Part shown: positions 24,101 through 63,486 of the stretch, one piece after another
Numbering within the stretch: position 1 is the stretch's first letter
Layout of the letters: the number at the start of each line of letters is the position of its first letter
NCBI RefSeq assembly: GCF_002113885.1
Contig: NW_018404940.1
Coordinates: 286,146 to 350,145 of the forward strand
Length of the DNA: 64,000 bases
Origin: Mizuhopecten yessoensis
Lineage: Eukaryota
Direction: 5' to 3'
The notes under the pieces: generated by a model
The model's database searches: none
What the model was told of the DNA's origin: nothing
Seen by the model: the letters and a program-made list of their open reading frames with translations, nothing else
Program-made: the position numbers and the translations under genes

Positions 24101-27100
24101 TGATGCGGCACACAGATTTGTGTTGCCATCTATACAAATCAGTAGAGTGGAAACCAATCGATGACAATAAAGCCGCAACGGTTACAAAGGATTTGGGCTG
24201 TCGGTCTGGACAGAATCCCCACCAGTTCTGGCGTGGTTGTTATCATAGCTAAACATGGCGGATGCAGCTTCTCTGAATCCCAACCAATGCTTGTCTTGTG
24301 GTTAGGAAGAAAAATAAGGCGGACTGTGTACATGTACATCATAATATCATTGAAGTAAATTACCGACTATTTTTTTATTTTGATATCAGTTTTAACTGAG
24401 GTGGTTCGTTTGGAGTCTGACATCGGTTTTAACTGAGGTGGTTCGTTTGGAGTCTTACATGATTCGATTTTATAACCATAAACAACTGAGTTGCTGGATC
24501 AATTGAAACCATTTTATAACCATATATAAACAACTGCGTGGCTGGGTCAATTGAAACCAGTTTATAGCCATAAACAACTGATTGGCTGGATCAATTGAAA
24601 CCTGTTTATAGCCAAAAACAACTGAGTGGCTTTATCAATTGAAACCCGTTAATAACCATAAACAACTGATTGGCTGGATCAATTGAAACCTGTTTATAGC
24701 CAAAAACAACTGAGTATCTGGATCAATTGAAACCAGTTTATAGCCATAAACAACTGGGTAGCTGGATCAATTGAAACCTGTTTATAGCCATAAATAACTG
24801 GGTAGCTGGATCAATTGAAACCAGTTTATAGCCATAAACAACTGGGTAGCTGGATCAATTGAAACCAGTTTATAACAATAAACAACTGGGTAGCTGGATC
24901 AATTGAAGCCAGTTTATAGCCATAAACATCTGAGTAGCTGGATCAATTGAAACCAGTTTGTAACCATAAACAACTGGGTAGCTGGATCAATTAAAACCAG
25001 TTTATAGCCATAAACAACTGGGAAGCTGGATCAATCGAAACCAGTTTATAGCCATACACAACTTGGTAGCTGGGTCAATCGAAACAAGTTTATAACCATA
25101 AATAACTGAGTAGCTGGATCAATTCAAACCAGTTTATAGCCATAAACAACTGGGCAGCTGGGTCAATCAAAACCAGTTTATAACCATAAATAACTGAGTA
25201 GCTAGATCAATCGAAACCAGTTTAAAGCCATAAACAACTGAGTAGCTGGATCAATCGAAGCCAGTTTATAGCCATAAATAGCTGAGTAGCTGGATCAATT
25301 GAAACCAGTTTATAACAATAAACAACTGGGTAGCTGGATCAATTGAAGCCAGTTTATAACCATAAACAACTGGGTAGATGGATCAATTGAAACCAGTTTA
25401 TAACCATAAACAGCTGAATAGCTAGATAAATTGAAACCTGTTTATAGCCATAAACAACTGAGTAGCTGCATCAATCGAAACCAGTTTATAGCCATAAACA
25501 ACTGGGCAGCTGGGTCAATCAAAACCAGTTTATAACCATAAATAACTGAGTAGCTAGATCAATCGAAACCAGTTTATAGCCATAAACAACTGGGAAGCTG
25601 GATCAATCGAAACCAGTTTATAGCCATACACAACTTGGTAGCTGGGTCAATCGAAACCAGTTTATAACCATAAGTAACTGAGTAGCTAGATCAATCGAAA
25701 CCAGTTTATAGCCATAAACGACTGAGTAGCTGGATCAATTGAAACCAGTTTGTAACCATAAACAACTGGGTAGCTGGATCAACTGAAACCAGTTTATAAC
25801 CATAAACAACTGGGTAGCTGGATCAACTGAAACCAGTTTATAACCATAAACAACTGAGTAGCTGGATCAATCGAAGCCAGTTTATAGCCATAAACATCTG
25901 AGTAGCTGGATCAATTGAAACCAGTTTATAACCATACACAACTGGGTAGCTGGATCAATTGAAACCTGTTTAAAGCCATAAACAACTGAGTAGCTGGGTC
26001 AATCGAAACCAGTTTAAAGCCATACACAACTTGGTAGCTGGGTCAATCGAAACCAGTTTATAACCATAAGTAACTGAGTAGCTAGATCAATCGAAACCAG
26101 TTTATAGCCATAAACGACTGAGTAGCTGGATCAATTGAAACCAGTTTGTAGCCATAAACAACTGGGTAGCTGGGTCAATTGAAACCAGTTTATAACCATA
26201 AACAACTGGGTAGCTGGATCAACTGAAACCAGTTTATAACCATAAACAACTGAGTAGCTGGGTCAATTGAAACCAGTTTATAACCATAAACAGCTGAGTA
26301 GCTGGATCAATTGAAACCTGTTTAAAGCCATAAACAACTGAGTAGCTGGATCAATCGAAGCCAGTTTATAGCCATAAATAACTGAGTAGCTGGATCAATC
26401 GAAACCAGTTTATAGCCATACACAACTTGGTAGCTGGGTCAATCGAAACAAGTTTATAACCATAAATAACTGAGTAGCTAGATCAATTGAAACCAGTTTA
26501 TAGCCATAACCAACTGAGTAGCTGGCTCAATTGAAACCTGTTTATAGCCATAACCAACTGGGTAGCTGGGTCAATTGAAACCAGTTTATAACCATAAACA
26601 GCTGAATAGCTAGATAAATTGAAACCTGTTTATAGCCATAAACAACTGAGTAGCTGCATCAATCGAAACCAGTTTATAGCCATAAACGACTGAGTAGCTG
26701 GATCAATTGAAACCAGTTTGTAGCCATAAACAACTGGGTAGCTGGGTCAATGAAAACCAGTTTATAACCATAAACAACTGAGTAGCTGGATCAATCGAAG
26801 CCAGTTTATAGCCATAAATAACTGAGTAGCTTGATCAATTGAAACCAGTTTATAGCCATAACCAACTGGGTAGCTGGGTCAATTGAAACCAGTTTATAAC
26901 CATAAACGACTGGGTAGCTGGATCAATTGAAACCAGTTTATAACCACAAACAACTGGGTAGCTGGATCAATTGAAACCAGTTTATAACTATAAACAACTG
27001 GGTAGCTGGATCAATTGAAGCCAGTTTATAACCATAAACAACTGGGTAGCTGGATCAACTGAAACCAGTTTATAACCATAAACAACTGGGTAGCTGGATC

Positions 27101-30100
27101 AACTGAAACCAGTTTATAACCATAAACAACTGGGTAGCTGGATCAGTTGAAACCAGTTTATAACCATAAACAACTGTGTAGCTGGATCAATTGAAACCAG
27201 TTTATAACCACAAACAACTGGGTAGCTGGATCAATTGAAACCTGTTTAGAGCCATAAATAACTGGGTAGCTGGATCAATTGAAACCAGTTTATAATCATA
27301 AACAACTGGGTAGCTGGATCAATTGAAGCCAGTTTATAACCATAAACAACTGGGTAGCTGAATCAATTGAAACCAGTTTATAGCCATAAATAACTGAGTG
27401 GCTGGATCAATTGAAACAAGTTAATAGCCATAAATAACTGCGTGGCTGGATACATTGAAACCAGTTTATAGCCATAAATAACTGAGTAGCTGGATCAATT
27501 AAAACCAGTTTATAACCATAAACAACTGGGTAGCTGAATCAATTGAAACCAGTTTATAACCATAAACGACTGGGTAGCTGGATCAATTGAAACCAGTTTA
27601 TAACCATACACAACTGGGTAGCTGGATCAATTGAAACCTGTTTAGAGCCATAAATAACTGGGTAGCTGGATCAATTGCAACCAGTTTATAGCCATAAACA
27701 ACTGGGTGGCTGGATCAATTGAAACCTGTTTATAGCCAAAAACAACTGGGTATCTGGATCAATTGAAACCAGTTTATAGCCATTAAAACAACTGAGTAGC
27801 TGGATCAATCGAAGCCAGTTTATAGCCATAAATAGCTGAGTAGCTGGATCAATTGAAACCAGTTTATAACCATAGACAACTGTGTAGCTGGATCAATTGA
27901 AACCAGTTTATAACTATAAACAACTGGGTAGCTGGATCAATTGATACCAGTTTATAGCCATAAACAACTGAGTAGATGGATCAATTGAAACCAGTTTATA
28001 ACCATACACAACTGGGTAGCTGGATCAATTGAAACCAGTTTATAGCCATAAACAACTGAGCGGCTGGGTCAATTGAAACCAGTTTATAGTCATGCACAAC
28101 TGTGTGGCTGGGTCAATTGAAACCAGTTTATAGCCATACACAACTGCGTGGCTGTATCAATTGAAACCAGTGTATAGCCATACACAACTGAGTGGCTGGG
28201 TCAATTGAAACCAGTTAATAGCCATACACAACTGTGTGGCTGTATCAATTGAAACCAGTTTATAGCCATACACAACTGCGTGGCTGTATCAATTAAAAAC
28301 CAGTTTATATCCACAAACAACTGCGTGGCTGGATCAATTGAAACCAGTTAATAGCCATAAATAACTGCGTCGCTGGATCAATTGAAACCAGTTTATAGCC
28401 ATACACAACTGAGTGTTGTATCAATTGAAACCAGTTTATAGCCATAAATAACTGAGTAGCTGGATCAATTGAAACCAGTTTATAGCCATAAATAACTGCG
28501 TGGCTGGATCAATTGAAACCAGTTAATAGCCATAAATAACTGCGTCGCTGGATAAATTGAAACCAGTTTATAGCCATACACAACTGAGTATTGGATCAAT
28601 TGAAACCAGTTTATAGCCATACACAACCGAGTGTTGGATCAATTGAAACCAGTTTATAGCCATACACAACTGAGTGTTGTATCAATTGAAACCAGTTTAT
28701 AGCCATACCCAACTGAGTGTTGGATCAATTGAAACCAGTTAATAGCCATACACAACTGCGTGGCTGTATCAATTACAAACAAGTTTATATCCACAAACAA
28801 CTGCGTGGCTGGATCAATTGAAACCAGTTTATAGCCATTAACAACTGCGTGGCTGGATCAATTGAAACCAGTTTATAGCCATACACAACTGCGTGGCTGT
28901 ATCAATTAAAAACCAGTTTATATCCAAAAACAACTGCGTGGCTGGATCAATTGAAACCAGTTTATAGCCATAAGTAACTGAGTGTTGGATCAATTGAAAC
29001 CAGTTTATAGCCATAAATAACTGCGTGGCTGGATCAATTGAAACCAGTTTATAGCCATAAATAACTGCGTGGCTGGATACATTGAAACCAGTTAATAGCC
29101 ATAAATAACTGCGTGGCTGGATACATTGAAACCAGTTTATAGCCATAAATAACTGCGTGGCTGGATCAATTGAAACCAGTTAATAGCCATAAATAACTGC
29201 GTGGCTGGATCAATTGAAACCAGTTTATAGCCATACACAACTGAGTGGCTGGGTCAATTGAAACCAGTTTATAGCCAAAAACAACTGAGTGGCTGGGGCA
29301 ATTGAAACAAGTTTATAGCTATAAACAACTGAGTGGCTGGATCAATTGAAACCAGTTTATAGCCATAAACAACTGCGTGGCTGGATCAATTGAAACCAGT
29401 TTATAGCCATACACAACTGAGTGGCTGGGGCAATTGAAACCAGTTTATAGCCAAAAACAACTGAGTGGCTGGGTCAATTGAAACAAGTTTATAGCTATAA
29501 ACAACTGAGTGGCTGGAACAATTGAAACCAGTTTATAGCTATACACAACTGAGTGGCTGGATCAATTGAATCAAAGACAGACAATCTTCGATCAAATCAT
29601 TGTGAAAATTAACTGATGTTGATGAGATTTTTTTAGCTTGATTTAAAATTTAAAAGTGTTTAGCGTGATATATCTTTAAACTGTTTTCGAGAGTATTTCA
29701 AAACAATGTACATCTTAGGAGTGTAATTTTTGTAGCGAGCTATACTTTTACCCTTTGTCTATATAGTATTTTGTAGTGGGATGTACATTTACCCTTTGTT
29801 TATATAGTATTTTGTAGTGAGCTATACGTTTACCCTTTGTTTATATAGTATTTTGTAGTGGGATGTACTTTTTAACTGGTTCATGGAGTACTTGTTGCGG
29901 GATGGATGTTTAAACATTTGGTTAATTGAACGTTGTTTTAGCATGACATATCTTGTAACTATGGATTACCGAGTATTTTAGCGAAACATATATTATGACT
30001 TAAGTTTATTTAGAGTTTTGTAGCGGGATAAGTCTTCGAACTGGTTAAAGGACTATTTTATGGAGGGATATAACTTACCTGTGGTTAACGTAATAGAATG

Positions 30101-38989: not shown

Positions 38990-40100
38990 TACATACATGA
39001 ACAAAGTAAAATATATAAATGTTCCAACAAACAAAGTAGAACACATAAATATACAAAAATAAACAAAGTAGAATATTTAATTTTACAAACATAAACAAAG
39101 TAGAACATATACTTTTACAAACAAACAAAGAATATATAATTATTAAATATAAACAAAGTAGAATATATGATTTTACAAACAAACAAAGTAGAATATATGA
39201 TTTTACAAACAAACAAAGTAGAATATATGATTTTACAAACAAACAAAGTAGAATATATGATTTTACAAACAAACAAAGTAGAATATATGATTTTACAAAC
39301 AAACAAAGTAGAATATATGATTTTACAAACAAACAAAGTAGAATATATGATTTTACAAACAAACAAAGTAGAATATATGATTTTACAAACAAACAAAGTA
39401 GAATATATGATTTTACAAACAAACAAAGTAGAATATATGATTTTACAAACAAACAAAGTAGAATATATGATTTTACAAACAAACAAAGTAGAATATATGA
39501 TTTTACAAACAAACAAAGTAGAATATATGATTTTACAAATAAACAAAGTAGAATATATGATTTTACAAACAAACAAAGTAGAATATATGATTTTACAAAC
39601 AAAGAAGAGTATATAATTATTAAACATAAACAAAGTAGAACATATACTTTTACAAACAAACAAAGAATATATAATTATTAAATATAAACAAAGTAGAATA
39701 TATGATTTTACAAACAAAGAAGAATATATGATTTTACAAACAAACAAAGTAGAGTATATAATTATTAAACATAAACAAAGTAGAATATATGATTTTACAA
39801 ACAAACAAAGAAGAATATATGATTTTACAAACAAAGAAGAGTATATAATTATTAAACATAAACAAAGTAGAATATATGATTTTACAAACAAGCAAAGAAG
39901 AATATATGATTTTACAAACAAACAAAGAAGAATATATGATTTTACAAACAAAGAAGAATATATAATTATTAAACATAAACAAAGTAGAATATAAGATTTT
40001 ACAAACAAACAAAGTAGAATATATGATTTTACAAACAAACAAAGTAGAAAATATATATAATTATTAAACATAAACAAAGTAGAATACATATTCAAAGTAG
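38990..40100. repeat. 30-bp AT-rich satellite with compound flanks
   Basis: (ACAAACAAACAAAGTAGAATATATGATTTT)n, near-perfect x15 at ~39150-39600. Variant units with ATAATTATTAAAC lie on both sides. Confidence 0.97.
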
Positions 40101-42799: not shown

Positions 42800-44360
42800 A
42801 TGATAAAAGATTAGTGAAACTTATGTCAATTATCAAAATTTGGAGTAGAAGAATATTAACACTAAATCTTTATTAATATCCCAATTTAATCATCTATTTA
42901 GCTCCTTACCAAATCCAAATGTTTATTTTATTAAAAAAATAAATTCAGAACTTTTTAATATGGAAAAGTAAAGTAGAAAAAACAAAACGGGATATAATTA
43001 GCAAAAACTATCAGGAAGGGGGTCTTAAAATGATACACATCAAGTCTTTTATTGAAGCCTTGAAACTAACTTTGATACGTAGATTGTTTACGTCAGGGGG
43101 TAAATGGCAAGTAAATGGCAAGTGTTATCTAAAAAAAATAGCAGATAAAGAAGATTGTATAAGAGAGATAAAAAAAAACCTCCAATACAAGTAGAATGAA
43201 AATGCCTATACAAGCAATGGTTTGAAAATGGTGTTATATTTATAAATGACTTATTAAAAGATAATAGGTCTGGTATTTTTTATAGTTTTATAGAATTTTC
43301 ATATAAATTTGATGTAAAAACTAACTTTTTCACATATCAAGGTATTATTAATGCTATAAAAACTATATATCCAATGATTATACTTCAAATACTTTGATTA
43401 GTTATCCATACGTACCCTGAAATTTAAAAATATGTATGAAGCATAAAAAAGGAACCCGAGATTTTTATAAGTTGTTGTGCCAAAATAGTACCATATCCAC
43501 TGGGAAAAATAAATGGAATGAATTGTTTGAAATTGATGATGACACATGGAAATTGATATACATGATTCCTTTTACAGTAACTAGAAATTCAAAATTACAA
43601 TGTCTCAAACACAGAATAAATCAACACATTTTAACAACAAACCCCTATCTTCTTAAAGCAGCTTTTACCTTTAGTGCTCTTTGTTTTCAATGTAAGACAG
43701 AAATAGAAACAATAATTCACACACTATGGGAACGTGAAAAAGTACAAGACTTTCTGCAAAATTTTGAGTTCCTTCTTGATGCATTGTTAATCCCATTTGG
43801 TTTTAACAAGGAAACCTTCAGTTTCGATCTATTTAATCAAAATAGTATCAGTAGTAGGGTAGATAATATTATAATTCTAATTATAAATTATAAAACAATC
43901 TATTTATAAATCGAGATATTTACAAATGTCATTGTCAGAAGTTGCACTTATGAACCTTATCAAGGACACATTTCATACTCGGAGATATATTGCTGTTGGT
44001 AAAAGTGACCTATTTTTATTGAAATTTAATACTGAATGGGGAAAATGGGAAAGACTACTTGGTATTGCTTAAACCCTGTCTTTGTCAAAATATGTACACT
44101 TATCTATAGAATATACTTATATAAACGTGTACTTCTAAATATCTATGTAAAACTCCTTGAACTTTCCGACACATCTATATAGCGTCTTTGTTTCGCAACC
44201 CCCCTCCAAATAATAGAGAAGTACCATGGCCATATTTGCAGGTTATTATTATTGAATGTATAATGAATGAATGGTAATGTGTGAGAGTAATAATGTTTAT
44301 GTATGATATATTTGCATTGTTATAAACTTGGGAATAAAATACAAAAAAAAATCCAAAACA
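42800..44360 (+). mobile_element. 5'-truncated, decayed L1/Tx1-clade LINE (ORF2 C-terminus, 3'UTR, A-rich tail)
   Basis: Frameshifted peptides ISQFNHLFSSLPNP, KNYQEGGLKMIHIKSF, and ORF 43436-43909 with a zf-RVT-like C..C...ETIIH.LWE. AATAAA at ~44333 followed by an A-rich tail. Confidence 0.85.
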
Positions 44361-46149: not shown

Positions 46150-46995
46150 CTTCTAGCTTTTCTATCCGAAAGTAATTCTTATTTTGATTCGATATATAAA
46201 GATTCATTTTGGCATAGGATAGTAATCTAGTAATTGTTCTTGCTGCTTCACGCTGAGCTCGCTCTTACTTTTCTGAATCTAGTTGAAAGCATCCATCCCA
46301 AACCTCACACGCATATTCGAGAACAGGTATTATAAATGATTTGTAAATTCTTAATAGAGTATCACGCTTTAACATATTTCACTAATGTGATCAGGCTATA
46401 CTGAAATTAAAAAAAAAAAATGTCAATCAAAAATTAAATCAAGCTCTTAAAACAACCTCAGTTTGGTTGGATTAAAAGTAACAAGCCAAGTTTTTGCCAA
46501 CTTATTTAGTTTTTCTAAATCTCTATTTAAAATGAATTATATTTCTCGACATGTAGCAGAAGATTTTTTGAGAGAAGTATCATCAGCAAATAGACGTACT
46601 GTTGATTCTAGTTCATCAGCTATATCATTTATATAAATAAGAAAACGAAGAGGCCCGAGAATTGAGCCTTGGGGAATTCCGGCCCCAATCATACCGAACT
46701 ATTAATAGATACTTTTTGTTGTCTATTACTTAAGTAGTTTTTTAACCAGGACAAGAAGTCACCCGACATACCATATGGTTTTAATTTGACCAGTAGACCT
46801 TTATGCCTGACTCTGACAAAGGCTTTAGAAATGTCACTGAATATCACACAAGTGTGTTTCTTTTCTTCTAGGTCTAAACAAAAGTTGTGATATATTTCTA
46901 TTAGTTGATGAACTGTTGAATGACCGGGCATAAAACCTGCTTGGTACTGATGAAATAAATCTTTTTCAAAAAAATAATTGTGCAATTGCTTAAAA
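46150..46995 (-). mobile_element. CR1/L2-group LINE reverse-transcriptase remnant
   Basis: [74 protein letters not shown], with stops and frameshifts. Confidence 0.92.
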
Positions 46996-47067
46996 AACAG
47001 GATAGTTGTAATAACATATAACAGAGTCTGGAAGCTTGTTGATGAACGCCAACATACTAATTGTGAC

Positions 47068-47460
47068 ACAGTCAGTGTTGCGACGTTGTGTAATTGCTTA
47101 CGTATATCGGGAATATCTCGGTGAATCCAGGAATACATAGATATGACCTTAAAGTCTCAACTGACCATTTATTATGAGGGGCTTATGGACCTTTGACAGT
47201 CAGTGTTACGACGTTGTGTAATTGATTACGTATATCGGGAATATCTCGGTGAATCCAGGAATACATAGATATGACCTTAAAATCTCAACTGACCATTTAT
47301 TATGTGGGGCTTATGGACCTTTGACAGTCAGTGTTACGACGTTGTGTAATTGATTACGTATATCAGGAAAAGCTCGGACAACGTTGTGTAATTGATTACG
47401 TATATCGGGAATATTAATCCAGGATTACATAGATATGATCTTCAAGTCTCAACTGACCAT
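47068..47460. repeat. 128-bp tandem repeat x~3 between two divergent LINE remnants
   Basis: CAGTCAGTGTT(G/A)CGACGTTGTGTAATTG... at ~47069, 47197 and 47325. The third copy is rearranged. Confidence 0.92.
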
Positions 47461-52059: not shown

Positions 52060-53270
52060 GAGGTGGGACCTCTTCATCAATTGTCTGGGCTGATAGAGTG
52101 GGACCTCTTCATCAATTGTCTGGGCTGATAGAGTGGGACCTTATTAATTGTCTGGGCTGATAGAGTGGGACCTCTTCATCAATTGTCTGGGCTGATAGAG
52201 TGGGACCTCTACATAAATTGTATGGACTGATAGAGTGGAACTTCTCTATCAATTGTCTGGGCTGATAGAGTGGAACTTCTCTATCAATTGTCTGGGCTGA
52301 TAGAGTGGAACTTCTCTATCAATTGTCTGGACTGATAGAGTGGAACTTCGCTATCAATTGTCTGGGCTGATAGAGTGGAACTTCTCTATCAATTGTCTGG
52401 GCTGATAGAGTGGAACTTCTCTATCAATTGTCTGGGCTGATAGAGTGGAACCTCTTTATAACTTGTCTGGGCTGATAGAGTGGAACCACCTCTTCAATTA
52501 TAATCTGGGCTGATAGAGTGGGGCCTCTTTATTATTGGTCTGGGCTGATAGGGTGAGGCCTACTTATTATTTCCTCTTCATTTATTGTCTGGGCTGATAG
52601 GGTGGGGCCTACTTATTACTTCCTCTTCATTAATTGTCTGGGAAGATAGAGTGGGGCCTCTTTATTATTTGTCTGGGCTGATAGGGTGAGGCCTACTTAT
52701 TACTTCCTCTTCATTTATTGTCTGGGCTGATAGGGTGGGGCCTACTTATTACTTCCTCTTCATTAATTGTCTGGGCTGATAGGGTGGGGCCTCTACATAA
52801 GTTGTCTGGGCTGATAGAGTGGGATCTCTTCATTAATTGTCTTGGATGATACAGTGGGACCTTATTAATTGTCTGGGCTGATAGAGTGGGACCTCTACAT
52901 TAATTGTCTGGGCTGATAGAGTGGGACCTCTTCATTAACTTTCTGGGCTGATAGAGTGGGACCTTATTAATTGTCTGGGCTGATAGAGTGGGACCTCTAT
53001 ATTAATTGTCTGGGCTGATAGAGTGGGACCTCTTCATTAATTGTCTGGGCTGATAGAGTGGGACCTTATTAATTGTCTGGGCTGATAGAGTGGGACCTCT
53101 TCATTAATTGGCTGGGCTGATAGAGTGGGACCTCTATACTAATTGTCTGGGCTGATAGAGTGGGTCCTCTATATTAATTGTCTGGGCTGATAGAGTGTGA
53201 CCTTATTAATTGTCTGGGCTGATAGAGTGGGACCTTATTAATTGTTTGGGTTGATAGAGTGGGACCTTTG
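52060..53270. repeat. 35-bp minisatellite (~33 copies, decayed copies extend to ~51760 and ~53500) just 3' of ZNF gene 1
   Basis: AATTGTCTGGGCTGATAGAGTGGGACCTCTTCAT(C/T). Period checked (52251 to 52286). Confidence 0.96.
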
Positions 53271-53693: not shown

Positions 53694-56150
53694 TTACTCC
53701 TGATCAGGAGTAATGGAATCTGCCCCGCCGTAACCTTGATATTGAGAAGCGTTGAGATATTGTGATGCTAGACTTGTGTAGTATGCATATAGTGAGGATA
53801 TAGACAAGTTGTCAGGAGGCTCCATGTCATGTAGACATTTATTTAAAACATTGTCAACCCTTGGCAAGCTGAGATTGTTAGGCTCAGTCTGAGTTAATGT
53901 ATAACGTGCGTCGGCAACAATACCAACAGTCTGTTGAGAGCAGGCCATGGGGTAGTGGTATCTTGTTGGGTCCATGTGACTAGAGGTTGGAGGATTCAGG
54001 TAGGGGGAGTGTTGGTGAGGGTGTAAACTATACGATGCAACATTGTCTCCTTGATTACTGCCCAGGGGAGGTAACTGTGGGGGCAGGGGTAAGGGGCGGC
54101 AGTAGTCAATGGTGATGAAGGACTGGGCATCAGGAAGGCAGGTTGGATCAGAAGTTCCCTGCAGCATGTTTGGGGATGGGGACTCGTTAGTTGGACACGG
54201 GGGGAGTGCCTCAAGGTTACCTGTGTCAGGAGAAGGTTGTACAGCTGTATCTGAAACACAACCTTCCTGATATTTCAACTGAGAAATGCTTGACTGATTA
54301 GTGTCATTGTCTGCTTGTTCAATGATATTCTGTTTTTGGGATTCATTTGTTTTTGTATCCCTTAGATCAAAATCTTCCCCTAAATCCACAACGACATCCT
54401 CCTCTGCACTATCATGGTTCTCCTCTCCTGGGTTCTTTCGCCCCTTTTCAACAATATCTTCCCTCCAGGATTTGGTATCTTTATTGATTTTATGAACCAT
54501 TATTAAATGACGACGAATTATTCCTGAATCACCAAAAGATCGACCACAAACTTTGCAACAAAAAGGTTTCTCTCCCTTGTGTGACCGTTCATGTCTCTGC
54601 AGAGACTGTTTTTGTATAAAAGCACGTCCGCAGTCTTTACACTCATAAGCCTTCTTTTCCTGATGAATTTTTGCATGCATCTGTAAACCAGATCTTTGCT
54701 GAAATGCTTTTTTGCATATTTCACATTCAAATATTTTTTTACCTGAATGTACGAATTTATGATCTCGGAGAGCCGAGTCATACGTGAAACTTTTCCCACA
54801 AATATTACATGTAAATGGACGACTTCCAGAGTGGACATTCTGGTGCATATTTAGAGAGTGTTTAGTTGTGAAGCTTTTGCCGCACACAGGACACAGATAT
54901 GTACGATTTTCCCCATAATGTATAGACTTGATGTGGCATTTAAGGACATAATGAGAGGAAAATGTCTTCTCGCACATTCCGCAAGGAAAATCAGGTTTTA
55001 TATAACCATCCTTGTGAGATTTCAGATGGTCTTCCAGGGTTCGCAAAATCTTGTACGTCTTACCACAGACATCACAGCAGTATTGGGTGTCTCTGTGTAC
55101 CAGACGACAGTGGCGCTTGGCATACCTTTCACTTGGAAACAACTTCTGGCAGACGTTACATTTGGTGGGCTTTGCTCGATGCATGCGTGAATAGTGTTCT
55201 CTTATAGCAGTGTTACTTTTGTGAATAAAATTACATTCAACACATTGATACATCTTCAGGTCATTTTGTGATCTACTCTGTGTATTGTTTCCTCGATGAC
55301 TTGGATCAACTATTTCACACATATCCTCATTGACGACTATATAACACTTTTCAGTTGAAACTGCCTTTTTGTCATTTTCTTCCAGGAGTTCTTTTGAATT
55401 TGGGGAAGTGTGGGTATTGTTCTTGCATTTTTTCTTTTTTGAAAAAGATTTGCTACGTTTGTTTTCATTATTTCTCCTATTTGATGACGGTAAAGTAAAT
55501 TCCGTCTTAAAACAATCGACATTACTCCCAACGAATGAAATATATTTCTTTGCTACTGGTACTTCTTTGAATTCTTCCTCTCCAAGTGAGTCTTTTACTT
55601 TTGAGATGTCATCGTTGTGCTGCTTAACACTGGCGAACTCCTCTTCTTTACCAAGTGACGAGCAAATGTCAGATATCGTGTTTTTCAGCGAGTTATATTC
55701 ATGATTTTCGTAGTCACAATCATCATCAGGGTCCATATCCTTGACATCGACTGTAGCTTCCTTGCAAACCATGACGTTTGATGGTATATGCAACTCGGCA
55801 CCAGAATTAATATTAATCCGTGGAGTAGGCGTGTCTCTAGTTTTTATTTTCGTGGTATTGACACCATACTGGTCCGACGTACCGTAGATGTCCAGTGTCC
55901 TTGACAGCGTGTCATAAATCTGGCCTATCGGTGACCACTGACCCTCTAATCGGTAGTAGTTTGGTCTTTTAATCACACGAACACCGGAATTTTCACTTAC
56001 ACGACGCAACATGCCAACAAAATCAAAATGTTCGGGAAATTTCCCTACGAAATCTTTAGCGACATCTGCCCGAATTTTGGAGAAAATTGGTGTTGTGATG
56101 CTTCCTGGTAATTGCCTACTATGCATTTCACTAGACACTAGTGTCATCAT
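53694..56150 (-). CDS. C2H2 zinc-finger protein 1 (818 aa): N-terminal KH-like domain, 9 fingers, Pro/Gln/Ser/Tyr-rich tail
   Basis: Uninterrupted ORF with an in-frame TAA 5 codons upstream of the ATG. Nine C-x2-C-x12-H-x3/4-H fingers at 54492-55250, with SGSRPF and KGEKPF linkers. Confidence 0.93.
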   Translation of the reverse strand: MMTLVSSEMHSRQLPGSITTPIFSKIRADVAKDFVGKFPEHFDFVGMLRRVSENSGVRVIKRPNYYRLEGQWSPIGQIYDTLSRTLDIYGTSDQYGVNTTKIKTRDTPTPRININSGAELHIPSNVMVCKEATVDVKDMDPDDDCDYENHEYNSLKNTISDICSSLGKEEEFASVKQHNDDISKVKDSLGEEEFKEVPVAKKYISFVGSNVDCFKTEFTLPSSNRRNNENKRSKSFSKKKKCKNNTHTSPNSKELLEENDKKAVSTEKCYIVVNEDMCEIVDPSHRGNNTQSRSQNDLKMYQCVECNFIHKSNTAIREHYSRMHRAKPTKCNVCQKLFPSERYAKRHCRLVHRDTQYCCDVCGKTYKILRTLEDHLKSHKDGYIKPDFPCGMCEKTFSSHYVLKCHIKSIHYGENRTYLCPVCGKSFTTKHSLNMHQNVHSGSRPFTCNICGKSFTYDSALRDHKFVHSGKKIFECEICKKAFQQRSGLQMHAKIHQEKKAYECKDCGRAFIQKQSLQRHERSHKGEKPFCCKVCGRSFGDSGIIRRHLIMVHKINKDTKSWREDIVEKGRKNPGEENHDSAEEDVVVDLGEDFDLRDTKTNESQKQNIIEQADNDTNQSSISQLKYQEGCVSDTAVQPSPDTGNLEALPPCPTNESPSPNMLQGTSDPTCLPDAQSFITIDYCRPLPLPPQLPPLGSNQGDNVASYSLHPHQHSPYLNPPTSSHMDPTRYHYPMACSQQTVGIVADARYTLTQTEPNNLSLPRVDNVLNKCLHDMEPPDNLSISSLYAYYTSLASQYLNASQYQGYGGADSITPDQE

Positions 56151-56917
56151 GGAGTCAAAACATTATTCCGACAACGATAGCGACGAATCTTTCTATGTAC
56201 ACAAAACATCATCAAACCATTTTGACTCTTTTCTTCCTTTTTTGTGTGTGAAGAGCTACATCAAAAGGGAAATAACTCCTACTCTCAATTTATTAAGGAA
56301 GACTGTCCAGTATTATTTAAATTTTAAAACATTGAATCAAATATCTCATTTTGCTCTAAAAGCAAAGATCATTATTTTTTATGGTAAGTTTTCAAAAAAG
56401 AATACTTAAATAAATATATCAGAAGATTGATCATGAGATAAAACAAACAAGATGTATCAAAGCTGAACCAAATGATTCCTTTAAAAAATATTTTGCTCAC
56501 TAGAAGCAGAAATGTATTATACATCTCTGCTTGAAGGTTTCATTGTAAAGCATTGTCATGTGATGTCATAATTTTAGAGATTGGCCAATGACATTATGTC
56601 CAGGGTGCTTCCCATTTGTTTACCAACCAAATCTCAAATAGCAGGTCTATCCAATGAACCATAAGTGAGGAAACCTATAGTGGTTGTGGGAGAAGTTCTG
56701 CTCTGCCACAGCTGATGTGTCACAAATTGGTGTCGTTAACCATTTATGCTACAAAGTAAATATGCTTTAAAGAAAAAGGTTGCTCATGCTCAGTTGATGG
56801 AAATGGAGCTTATATAAGTTACCTACATTCTATATATTGGTATACTGTAAGTACTCAAGAGGTCTCCATATATTAAGTTTGATGATGGTTATACTTCTAC
56901 CAACCACGGATAATAAT

Positions 56918-57000
56918 TTGTGAACCGCTTTGAGACGACCTAAGAACTAGGTTGTGATAAAGCGGTATATAAGAACCTCAAATTAACATTATTTTTATTA
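56918..57000 (+). mobile_element. L2-type LINE/SINE 3' end
   Basis: TGTGAACCGCTTTGAG...TAAAGCGGTATATAAG stem-loop followed by an (ATT)n-like tail, typical of L2 3' termini. Confidence 0.55.
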
Positions 57001-57719
57001 CTAATGGTATTAGAGTAATGGGGCTAAACGTAAAGCTTTAACCAAGATGTTTTACCAACAGTAAATACCAACATTTAATGTCCTTACCACTATGTGGCAG
57101 CAGTACAAACATTTAAAAGTTTTAATTTTGAACCAATATACCAGCTAATTAAGAACTAACCACAAAAATTGGTTTGTTCATATGTTTTGTTTATTTCATT
57201 GTACAATACATGTCCTCTAATGCAAAGTGCATGTAATTAAATGACATGAGAGCTAGTTCACACCAAACTAAAAGATTATATCAAGCATATATGCATATAT
57301 AGGTACACAGTAAATGTAGATGTAGACAGTAATCATAGCACATATGAATATAATACATACATTGTATATTTCCTTTTAACAAACACTCCATATCAATGAT
57401 TGAAATGTTACACTTAGATGCATAATAAAGCCATCCTGCATCTCTATGTCTTAGAACAACATAGTTATTTGTATACATATGGCCCAAAACAAAGCATAGG
57501 CTAGATTCAACAGAATTTGACAAACTTGTCAATAACCATTCATTAATTAATATTATATAGGGTCAAATACTGTTGCAGCAAATATCTCAGATCCCACGAA
57601 GTGTATTTTATTTTTACATATTTAAGTGCAAAACAAAAAGCCACAATTGTTGCTATTGTTCTCCTGGACACTTAAGCAATCAGTGCAACATACCCTCTTA
57701 ATTATTGCAAATAATAAAT

Positions 57720-58330
57720 GTCTCAAGGGGAAGGGCCATACCCTGGAGCTTATCCTGTCAGCATGTCTGTTTACAATTCTTTAATGCCTGCAAGCAAGCA
57801 GTGGTTATTGGGTGGGAATCTGAACAGTTTTTATGTTATAATATGATCAAAGGCTTTAAAGTCCCTCGGAGCAGGGTCAGATCTCGGGGCCAATTCTAAC
57901 AGTATGATCATGTTCATCTGTTCATACCTTGAATTTGTAAAGTTATTGGGTGGGAATCTTAAATGTTTGCATTCCATGACTTATGGTTCCAAGTCCTCTG
58001 AGGTAAGGCAAGACCCCAGGGCAAATCCTGGTTACATACATATATGTACATGTATCTCTTCATGTTCAGAAATTGTGTACAATGTATATAGTTATTGGTT
58101 GGGGATCTCACTGTTTCCATTTCATGACCATAGTCCCCAGGTGATTATGAGCAGACCCTGCAGCCAATCCCCATAGCATACACGTATGTATTTGTCCCTT
58201 CATTCCCATTAGTTGAATAGCTGGTTAAAGGAGGTTGGGGGAGTGTTAAAATTCCATTCTGTGGTCCAGAAGGTCATTTTGAGAAAATGTTGATGGACGG
58301 ATGACAGACAGATGGATGAAAGATATTCCA
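57720..58330 (-). mobile_element. Decayed HINE-type element with ~140-150-bp internal units
   Basis: GTTATTGG(G/T)TGGG(A/G)ATCT recurs at ~57804, 57941 and 58091. GACGGATGACAGACAGA microsatellite at ~58300. Confidence 0.5.
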
Positions 58331-61195
58331 AAGTAAAAATATTGCCACATTATATATACATACATTAAAGTGAATGATCAGAATGGTCCTTCACCTGCTT
58401 TTCTAAAATACATATTGTATCTGGTTTTGAAAACAGAATAGCACCATGTCCATGTATGAATGACAACCAATATCACTTAACTGGTATCTGAAACTTCTGG
58501 TGTTAGCTACGGAATAATTCCTGGTAATGTAAGGTCATAACACAAAGATCTGTGACACACCAAACACTTCTCATAATGTTTTACATTGCAATTTATGTGT
58601 TGGGCCTATATGCACTTTAAAAAACACACTGTAGATTTCTGCATAATTCTTCTACAGAAATATATACATCTGATAGACTCGAGTGTTTGCCAAAAAATAA
58701 CAACTAAAGGAATCAGCTAGGAAACATGCAGTGACAAGAAACTTGCAGTGAAAAATCTCATTCTACGTTTACAGTATAGATACATGTATACAGTTACAAC
58801 TTCTGATGTGTAAATAAAATCAGAATATAGAATAATAATGCAATAGCACAGAAAATTATAAAAATCTTAATCCATTGTCAGGTTCTCAAGTTTAGGCAAT
58901 ATATGGTATTTATCTATATAAAATAAATGTATGATAGGAATAAACAAAACAATTAAATGGTTACTATTTTTGAAGTCACAGATATGCAATGTAGGTAGCA
59001 AAATATGGTGTTTAAAATGTTCAAACAGTAAGCTCTTCTAGTAGACAGGGAGCTTATTGTAGATAGATATATGTATATGTTTTATTAAAATTTGCATGCT
59101 GTGGTAAACTGTGACAGGAAGCCCTCTGCTATGTACCCCCATACCCAAGTCTGGTGATTGTCAGAGGGGTTAATCAGGGAAAATATGTCAAATAGAACTC
59201 AAACTGATCAAATATTGACAAATATGAAACGTTTCCAAAACACACAACATCTTTCCAAAAGTAATGCTACAGATAGTGTAAGAGCAGAGCGTCATTAGAA
59301 TATCTTCTGTAATATAAGAAATTATGTCCTTATGCCAGACGAAACCATTTTGACCTTCAATTTCAATTTCAAGCCTCAAGCTTTAAATAGGAAATGAAGC
59401 AAGGGCCTAAAAATGTTATGAAACACATCATTAATGGAAGATTTGTTATGCTTTTATATTTGAAGCAATGAATTTATTTGAAACTTCAAGATCAGGTGAC
59501 AGCTAGGTCGACATGGAGTAATGGTACAATGTCTATGCAGTTTCATCAATATATGTTTAACTTTTTAAAAAAAAAAGGAGAAGAAGGAGATGCTCCAACA
59601 GATTATCACAGATTTCATCATGTAGCACATTCTCTGTGTAGTCTAAATGATAAAATGCATGGACCTGCATGTTGCAGGCATATGCGGTCAGGAATTGATA
59701 GCGTAACCACTATTCAAGAATTGAAAGTATGTAACTTGAATTCATGGTTTTTGTACTTTAATTATTTTTCCATTTTTAGGGAATTATTGAAGAAGACACT
59801 GAAGCACATTGTACTTCATAAATGGCACAGATGGAAAGGCAATGGTATATTATGAATACCTTGAAGAGACAGGAAGACAGGTGTATAAAAGGAGGGGGAG
59901 GGGCGTTGTTGAGTTTACTGAAAAAAAAGGTGCTTTTTTTGTTTACCTTTTTAACCATCCCAATCAAATTTTCTATGGGGGAATTTTCAATTTTCAGCTA
60001 ACTTGGATCCTATCTTATATATACATTGTATATAGACATTTATAATAAACGTTGATGCACAATGATAATATTGACAATCCCCATGTGATTAAGATATATC
60101 TGCAACCACAAGAAGTTGAAATATTTGGGACAACTGTAACACCTTTGATGATAGTAAGATAGTCCAGAGTACCTTTACAGTTTACAGTTTAAATAGTTTC
60201 TATAGTACATAGACTTAGATCTAAATTAAAAATGTCACTTTCACAAACAAATTTCAATTCAAAGCAAAAACCACAAAAAAAGTGTGAAGAATAAAGGTTT
60301 ACAGATTACATGCATGTATGTATACTTTGCATAGAATTTATGATACACAAACCATAAAATATCCAACATCTTAATTCTTCAGTCACTAACAAAAATGAAG
60401 GACCATGTTAAATTAGATTGCCTTGGTAGGATGCCAATTTGGTCTCAGCTAGCTATATAGGTAATATCGGTTTGTAAGTTCAATCTGGAGACAATTTTGC
60501 CTAATGTTACAATATGGCCAAACATAATTTCTGTATGAGCCTTATGTTGAATCCACTTCATCCAAAAGGTTTTTACACAGAATGTTAAAGCACTTACAAA
60601 ATCCTGTTATTTATAAGAAAATACATTTTAAAATACTGGGTACTAATCCACATATTTAATAGATGCACAATTACAGCTTACGCATCATATTTAATCTTCT
60701 TTTTTATAAAAAAAATCTTTGTTCAAGAAAAAATAAATTGGTTTACAACGTCTAATTCACAATCTTGGTTAACATCTAATTCACAGTGAGAACTATTAGG
60801 TGTAGATTATAATGTGAATCACACTGTGTACAGGCTGTGTTAGTGAGGTGCTGGACTGCTAATTGGTACACTATAATTCCAAAATTGAGGCAATAAGCAT
60901 ATACACACTTATATGTGTAATGCATGTTATATTGATGCATTAACACAAGTTTAGGCATTAAGGGTCTAACGGGTGTCCCAAGCAAGTGATCGGTTACACA
61001 TTGGAATATGGGACAAAACTGTCAAATAATAGGGGTCCCTTTAAAGTTTTTGCTGTTTTGATAGAAAAACCTTGTAAGCACATATACAATCACTGTGTTG
61101 TAATGCTGATGAGAAGTTGTCAACTTAGGTATAAGCTGTCGACATCTACTTGTAAGCTAATGCTGTGAATATATATGGACCGGGCTATATATGGG

Positions 61196-63486
61196 TTATG
61201 TTGTGATACTGGCGAGAAGTTCTGTGTCCACAACAATGTCCTCGCGCCACACACTGGAGTCTTTCTGAAGCTTGTGTACAAGGATGACGTGACGACGGAT
61301 GGTAGAGATTGAGTTAAATGCCTGACCACAAAGCTTACACGAGTATGGCTTCTCTCCACGGTGGATAATTTCGTGGCGCCTGAGTGACTGACGTTGAGTA
61401 AAGCCACGACCACAGTGTCCACACAAGAACTTCTTCTCCATGTGAATTGCCTGGTGGATGGTCATGCATGACTTCTGCTTGAAGGCTTTACCGCAGATTT
61501 TGCACACAAAGTTCTTGGCTGAGGAGTGGATGAGCTTGTGTGTGGCTAGAGACTTCTCATACCCAAACACCTTACCACACTGATCACACTGGTGGTCATA
61601 AATTCTCATGTGGATGATTTTGGTGTGTTCTTGTAATGCTGCTTTGGAAGAAAATGTTTTATGACAGATATAACAAAAGTGCTTCACCTCCCTGACTTCA
61701 CGATCAAACTCCGACTCAGGTTCATGTTTTCGTCGAGAGTGTGTTCGGAGAAGGCTGGGGTTAGCGAAAGACTTATCACAAGATGAGCAAGGATATATAG
61801 GCTTCACATAGCCCGGTTCATGGGATTTGACATGAAGTTTTAAACTTGTGTTGACTTTATAGCGCTTGCCACAAATGTCGCAACAATACTTGGGAGGATT
61901 ATGAATCAATATGCGATGTCTCTTCATATCAAAAAGACTAGGGTACAATTTCCCACAAATATTGCAGTTCGTTGCTACATTTAGATGAGCTCTTCGATTG
62001 TGTGCATACAAACTTTTTCTATCCTTGGCAATGAATTCACACTCAGGACACTTTATATTGGTATCAGGGCCTGTGTTTTTTCTGGGTCGACCACGCTTTC
62101 TTTTGCCCTCCATAGATGTTTCTTGTTTTAGCATGTTTTTTTTCATTTTTTTCATTTTGGTGTACCGCTTTGGTGGCCTTTCAACCCTCCGCTTCCTGTA
62201 TTTCCTTTTTTTCACCTTCACAGATACTATACTTTCTTCAGACACCTCAGAATCAAAATTCTCAACTTCTTCAGACTGTTCTGTGTCGGAATCTAAATGG
62301 TAGTCTGCATCACCATGGTCAGATTTAGTTGCTTCTTCATTTACATCATCATCTGGCTCATCCCCATCATCCTGTTTTTGCTCATCACTTGCTTCATGAG
62401 GAGATTCACTGATTGGTTCAGAAACTGACTCTGATGTCCTTTTGTCTCTTGAATTCTCTGGAGTTTCCAGCGATTTTTTTGTCACTGTGACACTTTCGTC
62501 CTGCTCATCTTTAATCTTCACTTCCATCTCCCCATCCTTCTGTCCAGTGACCTGTGTTGGAGTTGTCATTCTCTGACTAGCAGATCCTTCTTGAACTCCA
62601 CTAATTTGGCTCAGTAGATCTAGATTTGTCACTAATTCTTTTCCTGGTAAACCGTGGCTAGACTGAGTTGCCTCCCCTTGATGTACAAGATTATCTCCTG
62701 CAATGTTAGCAGTTGTTTCTAGTCTATCTATGGTCCCTTCTATATCGCCACCAGTTGGTGCTGAACTGTTACCAAGGGAAGGTAGATCTAAGCTATCTCC
62801 CACATTCATTGGATTTTTTTCATTTATATTGGCAGATGGCAGTCCAACATTTGAATCGTATTGCCTATCTCCTATGTTTGCTGGGGTGTAAGATCTTTCC
62901 CGATTGTCAAAGTGTCTGTCCATCATGTTTGGCTGTGTGTATGGTCCCATTCTTGGATCATAATGACGTTCCCCACTATACCCAGGGGTGTAAGGTCCAC
63001 CTCTGGTATCGTAAAATTTATCTCCACTGTTTGTTTGCATGTATGATGTTCCCCTTGGATCATGTACTCTATCAGCCATGTTTCCAGCATATAAATACCA
63101 TCCCCGGTTGTCGAAATTCCTATTACCTGTTGTACCTGGTGTATAAGGACTGCCTCTGCTGTCATAGAAACGATCACCATTGTTGCCAGTATATGACCCA
63201 ACCCTTGAATCATAGTAACGGTCAGCTGTGTTCCCCGATGTATAAGACCGATCCCGCAGGTCTGGTTGGTCACTCATTCCGCCATGCCCATCCCGCACAC
63301 TGGGATTATTGATGTTTGTATCAGGGGTCATCATACGTTTGTTATGTGATATCTTTAGATCTTTAGCAGGTGAGTAGGCACTGGATACCATGGCAACCGC
63401 ACCATATATGGCCATAGTGTTTTCCAGCATGCTGTGGACGAAGGTCATCTGTGACCAGTCACCAACTATCTCAAAGTTGCTGTTTC
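61196..63486 (-). CDS. C2H2 zinc-finger protein 2, large terminal exon (5' exon(s) probably outside window): end of KH-like domain, 17-aa repeats, acidic tract, AT-hook, 9 fingers
   Basis: The ORF-track N-terminus (MKLYTF..) looks intronic. Acceptor TATATATTTCAG|GA AAC at 63487/63486 (phase 1). KRGRPRK AT-hook at ~62075-62098. Nine fingers at 61274-62056. Stop at 61196. Confidence 0.9.

What the first reader, a model, noticed from the sequence alone, without database searches (positions are those of the whole stretch)
55881..63486. Shared GXXG-less KH-like N-terminal domain on two tandem C2H2-ZNF paralogs: candidate undescribed effector domain
Seen: ZNF1 aa 22-90 (55881-56087) read IFSKIRADVAKDFVGKFPEHFDFVGMLRRVSENSGVRVIKRPNYYRLEGQWSPIGQIYDTLSRTLDIYG. 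The start of the ZNF2 exon (63401-63486) reads NSNFEIVGDWSQMTFVHSMLENTMAIYG. These align gap-free as G-x-W-S-x10-T-h-x-I-Y-G-type (G.WS.h..h...L..Th.IYG), although the linkers downstream are unalignable, so the segment appears to be under selection. Knowledge: type I KH domains follow h.h.h..hVG.hIGxxG..I+.I.E.SGA.I.h...h.h.G...h..A...h. ZNF1 matches this pattern (VAKDFVGKF / LRRVSENSGVRV / YRLEG / terminal helix), but the RNA-binding GXXG loop is replaced by PEHFDF. Inference: a degenerate KH fold reused as a protein-interaction module on poly-ZF proteins, occupying the position KRAB, SCAN, ZAD or BTB hold in other lineages. I know of no named domain of this kind.
Basis: partly seen in the sequence, partly recalled or inferred. 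Interest (0 to 1): 0.85.

Follow-up and report, generated by a model that had tools for sequence, protein, structure and literature searches.

The report
Mollusc zinc fingers with KH-fold cap
A small, ancient family of mollusc DNA-binding zinc-finger proteins starts with an unnamed 70-residue module shaped like an RNA-binding KH domain that has lost its RNA clamp and most likely serves to pair proteins together.

Summary
The window is Yesso scallop (Mizuhopecten yessoensis). Two tandem 9-finger C2H2 genes share a 70-aa N-terminal domain; ZNF2's exon beyond the window encodes the missing first half (36-38% identity). The domain is under purifying selection and has no Pfam name. It caps one family of C2H2 proteins in bivalves, gastropods and a chiton (two old subfamilies, at least three genes in scallop). 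Two AlphaFold models (pLDDT 86-88) give a type I KH topology; Foldseek's top hits are all KH domains. None of 80 sequences has GxxG and most are acidic, so canonical RNA binding is unlikely. The invariant N-terminal Phe aligns, by structure and weakly by sequence (E 0.4, not reproduced with other profiles), to Phe135 of DTX3L D2, a GxxG-less KH domain that dimerises through that residue. Best reading: a self-association module, analogous to BTB/SCAN/ZAD; inferred, not shown. Correction: this is a small conserved family, not a KRAB/ZAD-style expansion. Many bivalve members carry a separate Sin3-type motif behind the domain; these two genes do not. The scan had not noted this domain on other DNA.

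The parts
53694..56150 (-). ZNF1: intronless ORF, 818 codons from the first ATG (database protein P0001, 810 aa, starts at the ATG ending at 56126); subfamily A
   Evidence: RNA-library contigs cover it up to 56232-56234
55881..56087 (-). [quoted passage not shown]
56082..56087 (-). Ile-Phe of the N-terminal arm; Phe invariant in 80 of 80 sequences; aligns to DTX3L Ile134-Phe135, the dimer-interface residues
56019..56036 (-). alpha1-alpha2 loop that replaces the GxxG clasp
55935..55943 (-). G-x-W at the beta3-alpha3 junction (Gly 100%, Trp 95% conserved)
54486..55244 (-). ZNF1 array of nine C2H2 fingers, close to the family's conserved fingerprint
53751..53801 (-). conserved C-terminal tyrosine-rich motif of subfamily A (S.LYAYY..LA.QY), function unknown, amphipathic-helix-like
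61196..63486 (-). ZNF2 last coding exon (P0003 aa 44/45-806); first coding exon lies beyond the window in L002 10001-10130
63401..63486 (-). second half of the ZNF2 KH-like domain (beta3 and alpha3)
62078..62104 (-). AT-hook-like motif (R-G-R-P) just before the ZNF2 fingers; found in 41 family proteins, absent from ZNF1
61265..62050 (-). ZNF2 array of nine C2H2 fingers with a strongly diverged base-contacting fingerprint

Best explanation
The segment is a GxxG-less type I KH-fold domain that caps an old mollusc family of 9-finger C2H2 transcription factors and works as a protein-pairing module, not an RNA reader. Shown here: the fold (predicted, high confidence), the loss of the clasp, conservation, and the architecture. 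Inferred: the short arm in front of beta1, with its invariant [IV]-Phe, extends beta1 and pairs antiparallel with beta1 of a second copy, the Phe dropping into a hydrophobic cleft of the partner as Ile134-Phe135 do in the DTX3L D2 dimer. The proteins would then bind DNA as homodimers or paralog heterodimers, bridging two sites or reading a composite site, the job BTB, SCAN and ZAD do elsewhere. Activation or repression is supplied by separate short motifs (a Sin3-type motif in many bivalve members, a C-terminal Tyr-rich motif in subfamily A). My odds: KH-type fold 0.9; not a canonical nucleic-acid binder 0.8; self-association through the beta1 arm about 0.5.
For: AF2 models of ZNF1 and ZNF2 domains: pLDDT 87.9 and 86.1, same topology. 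Foldseek: ranks 1-17 (ZNF1) and 1-46 (ZNF2) are KH domains or KH-bearing chains, probability 0.94-1.00. An independent subfamily B member gives 10 of 10 KH_1 clusters, TM 0.63-0.72. ESM Atlas best matches for ZNF1 are RBM43/DTX3L/PARP14-type KH-like clusters, TM 0.63-0.70. DTX3L D2 (8r79): Z 6.5 and 6.2, rmsd 2.3 A over 58 of 60 residues, 17-19% identity; both ranges start in the register that puts the invariant Phe on Phe135, and the 61-sequence profile aligns 8r79 end to end in the same register. D2 dimerises by beta1-beta1' with Ile134 and Phe135 in the partner's cleft (PMC10955461). In both monomer models the arm holding the Phe is coil, not strand, as in the AF2 monomer model of D2, whose beta1 is three residues shorter than in the crystal. 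No GxxG in 80 sequences; median pI 5.0, 47 of 61 acidic; KH folds without GxxG have not been shown to bind nucleic acid (PMC12127562; PMC11997328; PMC11080071). dN/dS 0.13 in the domain versus 0.41 in the linker.
Against: No structural match is formally significant (best Foldseek E 0.003-0.005; VIA Z under 8, with ACT and ferredoxin-like folds tied). The sequence link to DTX3L D2 is E 0.4 and did not appear with three other profiles. No dimer could be modelled, and I had no coordinates to test whether the Phe is buried within the monomer against the conserved Trp and alpha3. The ZNF1 domain itself is basic (pI 9.1), as are the oyster ones. Canonical KH domains can also dimerise through beta1 while binding RNA (own knowledge: PCBP KH1).
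Confidence: 0.52

Rival explanations
1. The domain is a monomeric docking surface for a cofactor (corepressor, coactivator, ubiquitin ligase, or a PARP14/DTX3L-type protein through KH-KH contact), a true effector domain in the KRAB sense.
For: KH-like domains mediate heterotypic contacts among PARP9, PARP14 and DTX3L and a protein site is proposed for KHNYN. Exposed-looking conserved residues exist beyond the arm: the F-P-x-x-F-D-F loop of subfamily A and G-x-W. ZNF2 has no C-terminal tail and no Sin3-type motif, so the domain is its only conserved non-DNA-binding part.
Against: Many bivalve members carry a dedicated Sin3-type motif right after the domain (21 of 92, 0.5 expected), which suggests cofactor recruitment is handled separately. 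The most conserved residue maps on a known homodimer interface.
Confidence: 0.25
2. The domain still binds single-stranded DNA or RNA in a non-canonical way and cooperates with the fingers at melted promoters or nascent transcripts.
For: Best Foldseek hits are nucleic-acid-binding KH domains of PCBP and hnRNP K; the scallop ZNF1 and oyster domains are basic.
Against: No GxxG and almost no glycine in the loop in any member; family mostly acidic; charge is not conserved; no GxxG-less KH has been shown to bind nucleic acid.
Confidence: 0.1
3. The domain is a small alpha/beta sandwich unrelated to KH by descent (ACT or ferredoxin-like look-alike), possibly binding a small ligand.
For: VIA Z scores for ACT, ferredoxin-like and designed proteins tie with KH (6.3-7.3); no significant sequence hit to any KH family (best Pfam KH hits E 0.009-0.2 in single members).
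Against: Strand and helix order is that of type I KH; Foldseek, Atlas structure search and Atlas language-model features all rank KH first; weak profile hits fall on KH domains of FUBP1/2, vigilin, PARP14, N4BP1 and DTX3L.
Confidence: 0.1

Closest known systems
DTX3L D2 / KHL1 domain (PDB 8R79) and the KH-like domains of PARP9, PARP14 and RBM43 (Pfam PF26774 KH_I_RBM43)
   Same: Type I KH-like fold without GxxG; rmsd 2.3 A to D2; Ile-Phe arm in the same register; Gly-x-aromatic motif before the last helix; best Atlas matches.
   Different: Here a single copy at the extreme N-terminus of a DNA-binding C2H2 protein rather than in tandem arrays on ubiquitin ligases and ADP-ribosyltransferases; keeps two helices before beta2; homology is suggested, not statistically proven; no Pfam model of these families is met.
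Canonical type I KH domains (PCBP1 KH1, hnRNP K KH3, FUBP1, Nova)
   Same: Topology and hydrophobic pattern; top Foldseek hits; [ST]-G-[AV] turn before beta2.
   Different: No GxxG clasp, mostly acidic, no Pfam KH_1 match.
C2H2-associated N-terminal domains BTB/POZ, SCAN, ZAD (dimerisation) and KRAB (corepressor docking)
   Same: Position at the extreme N-terminus, long disordered linker, then a C2H2 array; lineage-restricted (PMC5509000).
   Different: Unrelated fold; found on only 2-3 genes per genome with a deeply conserved finger array, not on a fast-expanding family.
KHNYN / N4BP1 extended di-KH domain
   Same: KH fold with the GxxG replaced by a proline-containing link and no RNA binding.
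   Different: Tandem di-KH with helical extension on a nuclease; only a faint Pfam trace here (E 0.21).

Membership tests
Type I KH domain (canonical) | [quoted passage not shown] | tested here: met
   two AF2 models, pLDDT 86-88; Foldseek KH hits
Type I KH domain (canonical) | GxxG clasp between alpha1 and alpha2 | tested here: not met
   0 of 80 and 0 of 61 sequences
Type I KH domain (canonical) | match to Pfam KH_1 or related KH models at the curated cut-off | tested here: not met
   precomputed newer Pfam hits list only finger families
Type I KH domain (canonical) | binds single-stranded RNA or DNA | not testable with these tools
   needs EMSA or Bind-n-Seq; charge and loop argue against
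DTX3L/PARP14/RBM43 KH-like domains | KH fold lacking GxxG | tested here: met
DTX3L/PARP14/RBM43 KH-like domains | statistically significant sequence homology | tested here: inconclusive
   8r79 at E 0.4 end to end with A4, absent with A2, A3, A6; KH_PARP14_8 E 0.062 in one member; Atlas feature score 0.81 to RBM43
DTX3L/PARP14/RBM43 KH-like domains | Ile-Phe arm before beta1 as in the D2 dimer interface | tested here: met
   register; invariance; interface
DTX3L/PARP14/RBM43 KH-like domains | homo-oligomerisation or KH-KH protein contact | not testable with these tools
   structure tool folds single chains only
KRAB / SCAN / ZAD / BTB zinc-finger families | sequence or fold of KRAB, SCAN, ZAD or BTB | tested here: not met
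   no Pfam match; alpha/beta KH topology
KRAB / SCAN / ZAD / BTB zinc-finger families | N-terminal module, linker, C2H2 array | tested here: met
   domain starts within residues 1-12 in all full matches
KRAB / SCAN / ZAD / BTB zinc-finger families | large lineage-specific expansion over many unrelated finger arrays | tested here: not met
   all full-length carriers share one finger array; one search round only, so remote carriers could be missed

The most novel reading that the evidence does not exclude
A further class of C2H2-associated dimerisation domain, captured before the mollusc radiation from the DTX3L/PARP14/RBM43 group of ADP-ribosylation and antiviral genes. It lets paralogs with different DNA fingerprints (ZNF1, ZNF2, subfamily B) form homo- and heterodimers through a conserved beta1 arm, acting as mollusc architectural or combinatorial factors, and could dock KH-like domains of PARP14/DTX3L-type proteins onto chromatin.
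Probability: 0.3. Interest if true: 0.75.

Novelty: new variant of a known kind. Interest (0 to 1): 0.56.

Why it matters
Only a handful of N-terminal modules are known for C2H2 proteins, the largest class of animal transcription factors, and none is specific to molluscs or lophotrochozoans in the literature I could search. This adds an unnamed, foldable 70-residue domain conserved across bivalves, gastropods and a chiton, with a precise one-residue hypothesis (the invariant Phe) that a week of biochemistry can test. It would also be a clear case of an RNA-binding fold recycled for protein pairing on a DNA-binding factor. Its weight is limited by the small family size and the absence of any phenotype.

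Tried and rejected
Named Pfam family: none for the domain. Viral or transposon origin (as for SCAN): BFVD gave nothing better than E 0.03. P0010 (leafhopper, 7 stretches) is a repeat-derived false hit and was excluded. A KRAB-like expansion: rejected on finger fingerprints. A third copy in the window or nearby: none. Chance similarity of the two scallop segments: rejected by shuffles and the upstream exon. PDB sequence search of the Sin3-like motif gave no hit, so it rests on the published consensus. PDB sequence hits to a lysozyme repeat, S12 and T4 topoisomerase are short partial matches and were set aside. The origin of ZNF2 (from A or B) is unresolved: long branch in the finger tree, weakly with A in the domain tree (quick trees only). 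A metagenome locus scan could not run for lack of conserved words. The two 2026 raw-read runs had almost no depth on these genes, so no start site or strand was read.
Full report
Source and observation. The ZNF2 exon matches a protein annotated in Mizuhopecten yessoensis at 100% on contig NEDP02001613.1, which also carries ZNF1. ZNF1 is one ORF at 53694-56150 (-) and ZNF2's last coding exon is 61196-63486 (-). Each has nine C2H2 fingers, 44% identical between them. The quoted peptides are at the quoted places. The 26-residue match beats all 5000 shuffles. The decisive check is the exon outside the window: L002 10001-10130 encodes the first 43 residues of ZNF2, which align with ZNF1 at 36-38% over the whole domain with a single one-residue gap. 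The intron is GT-AG, phase 1, 2,060 nt here and 905 nt in Pecten maximus (gene ranges). Gene order ZNF2 then ZNF1 is kept in P. maximus. Between the two scallops dN/dS is 0.13 for the ZNF1 domain, 0.41 for its linker and 0.04 for its fingers; for ZNF2 it is 0.12 and 0.02 for the two domain halves and 0.19 for the linker. Contigs from two RNA-type libraries cover ZNF1 up to 56232-56234 and the ZNF2 3' region down to about 57316, with zero depth at 56373-56569, as expected for two separate transcripts; contigs cannot prove transcription.

The family. A profile search of 1.84 billion representatives returned 29 proteins; 28 are real and match at the extreme N-terminus, one is a repeat artefact. 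A second search with the finger array brought more members. Of 92 proteins defined by the finger fingerprint (near-duplicates included), 72 carry the whole domain, 12 begin inside it (truncated models) and 8 lack it; it starts within residues 1-12 in every full match; none of the unrelated vertebrate or insect finger proteins in the same set scores. Named carriers are bivalves (scallops, oysters, Mytilus, unionids, venerids, Mactra, Dreissena), gastropods (Patella, Haliotis, Gigantopelta, Littorina, Pomacea, Aplysia, Elysia, Biomphalaria and others) and the chiton Liolophura. No named non-mollusc and no cephalopod turned up, but many hits are unnamed and only one search round was possible. Two subfamilies, A and B, differ in fingerprint and separate in the finger tree (B support 98). 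They are neighbours in Patella and Mactra. B sits tail to tail with an ALKBH8-like gene in both Pecten and the chiton, so the family predates the split of these classes. Scallop has at least three genes: ZNF1 (A), P0133 (B) and ZNF2, whose fingers are strongly diverged yet conserved among scallops and whose origin is unresolved. Most members checked are intronless; the ZNF2 intron looks like a later gain (inference). This is a small, conserved family, not an expansion.

Fold. No Pfam model fits, and newer precomputed Pfam hits show only finger families. [quoted passage not shown] Foldseek ranks KH domains first for both (best E 0.0047 and 0.0031, probability 1.0, TM about 0.55). VIA-align gives KH chains Z 6.2-7.1, tied with ACT and ferredoxin-like folds, so that method alone does not decide. 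In the ESM Atlas the ZNF1 domain is nearest to RBM43, DTX3L-like and PARP14-like clusters (TM 0.63-0.70), and an abalone subfamily B domain gives ten KH_1 clusters by structure and KH or RBM43 clusters by features. The alpha1-alpha2 loop never holds GxxG and the domain is usually acidic (median pI 5.0), though ZNF1's own is basic. The GxxG clasp is central to nucleic-acid binding and KH folds without it have not been shown to bind (PMC12127562); such domains mediate protein contacts in PARP9, PARP14 and DTX3L (PMC11080071) and do not bind RNA in KHNYN (PMC11997328).

Mechanism. Two residues are invariant: a Phe in the arm before beta1 and the Gly of G-x-W. DTX3L D2, a GxxG-less KH-like domain, crystallises as a dimer of dimers; its main interface is antiparallel beta1-beta1' with Ile134 and Phe135 in a cleft of the partner (PMC10955461). 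D2 superposes on both models at 2.3 A over 58 of 60 residues; the ranges (model 2-67 and 1-67 against 132-191) put the mollusc [IV]-Phe on 134-135 if the start is gap-free. The 61-sequence profile independently aligns D2 end to end in that register, but at E 0.4, and three other profiles did not find it. In both monomer models the arm is coil, as expected of a strand that needs a partner, but the Phe could equally pack inside the monomer; I could not test this. I therefore infer, at about even odds, a self-association module that makes these factors homo- or heterodimers, as SCAN and ZAD do (PMC5509000). Regulatory output seems to come from separate motifs: 21 of 92 proteins, all subfamily A and bivalve where named, have a motif 3-12 residues behind the domain that fits the Mad-type Sin3 PAH2 consensus (0.5 expected from shuffles); subfamily A also shares a C-terminal Tyr-rich motif, and 41 proteins have an AT-hook-like motif. 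ZNF1 keeps only the C-terminal motif and ZNF2 only the AT-hook.

Comparison and verdict. It works like (inferred) BTB, SCAN or ZAD, but belongs to none of them. It has the fold of type I KH but fails the GxxG test, so it is not a canonical KH domain. Membership of the DTX3L/PARP14/RBM43 KH-like group is plausible and unproven. Literature searches found no description of this domain or architecture; the library lacks most subscription journals. Both ingredients are known kinds; the combination is new. Novelty: new variant of a known kind. Interest 0.56: real, ancient and sharply testable, but a small family with function only inferred.

Noticed in passing
P0008, P0009, P0077, P0103 and 17 others, residues about 84-106: Mad/Pf1-type Sin3-interaction-like motif (R-P-F-x-A-L-V-E-A-A) directly behind the KH-like domain in bivalve subfamily A; lost in scallop ZNF1 and ZNF2.
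   Followed up: partly
window 56088-56150 versus L001 about 9950-10003: M. yessoensis ZNF1 has lost the ATG used by P. maximus through a small deletion and has an in-frame ATG 10 codons further upstream, lengthening the arm in front of the invariant Phe; RNA contigs list no difference from the genome there.
   Followed up: partly
window 53751-53801: Tyr-rich C-terminal motif conserved in 31 subfamily A proteins from gastropods and bivalves; candidate cofactor-binding helix.
   Followed up: partly
window about 62750-63250 (ZNF2 aa 120-240): ZNF2 linker holds imperfect Tyr/Asp/Arg/Gly repeats (R-x-Y-D-x-R-x-G-x-Y), conserved in four scallops, low-complexity or condensate-like.
   Followed up: no
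L007 10001-22925 and L009 10001-22928: Subfamily B gene convergent with an ALKBH8-like gene (RRM, 2OG-FeII, methyltransferase) in both scallop and chiton: very old microsynteny.
   Followed up: partly
L002 1-2406: A calpain-15/SOL-like gene (RanBP zinc ribbons, peptidase C2) lies upstream of ZNF2 on the same strand.
   Followed up: no
P0019, P0026, P0029, P0033 and proteins starting at the last helix (P0055-57, P0063-66): Many gastropod models break at the G-x-W codon, pointing to an intron there, six codons from the ZNF2 intron: probably independent intron gains inside the domain.
   Followed up: no
window 56900-56990 and 56664-56694: Short high-copy repeat fragments between the two genes that attract most reads.
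   Followed up: no
window 24469-29570, 39000-40054, 52063-53267: Long minisatellites (44-bp x116, 30-bp x36, 35-bp x35); the 30-bp array makes the spurious long ORFs at 38.9-40.2 kb.
   Followed up: no
window 43436-43909 and 46689-47138: ORFs that look like decayed LINE reverse-transcriptase fragments (own reading of the translations).
   Followed up: no
window 57316-61195: RNA-library contigs run about 3.9 kb past the ZNF2 stop, suggesting a long 3' UTR ending about 1 kb before ZNF1.
   Followed up: no
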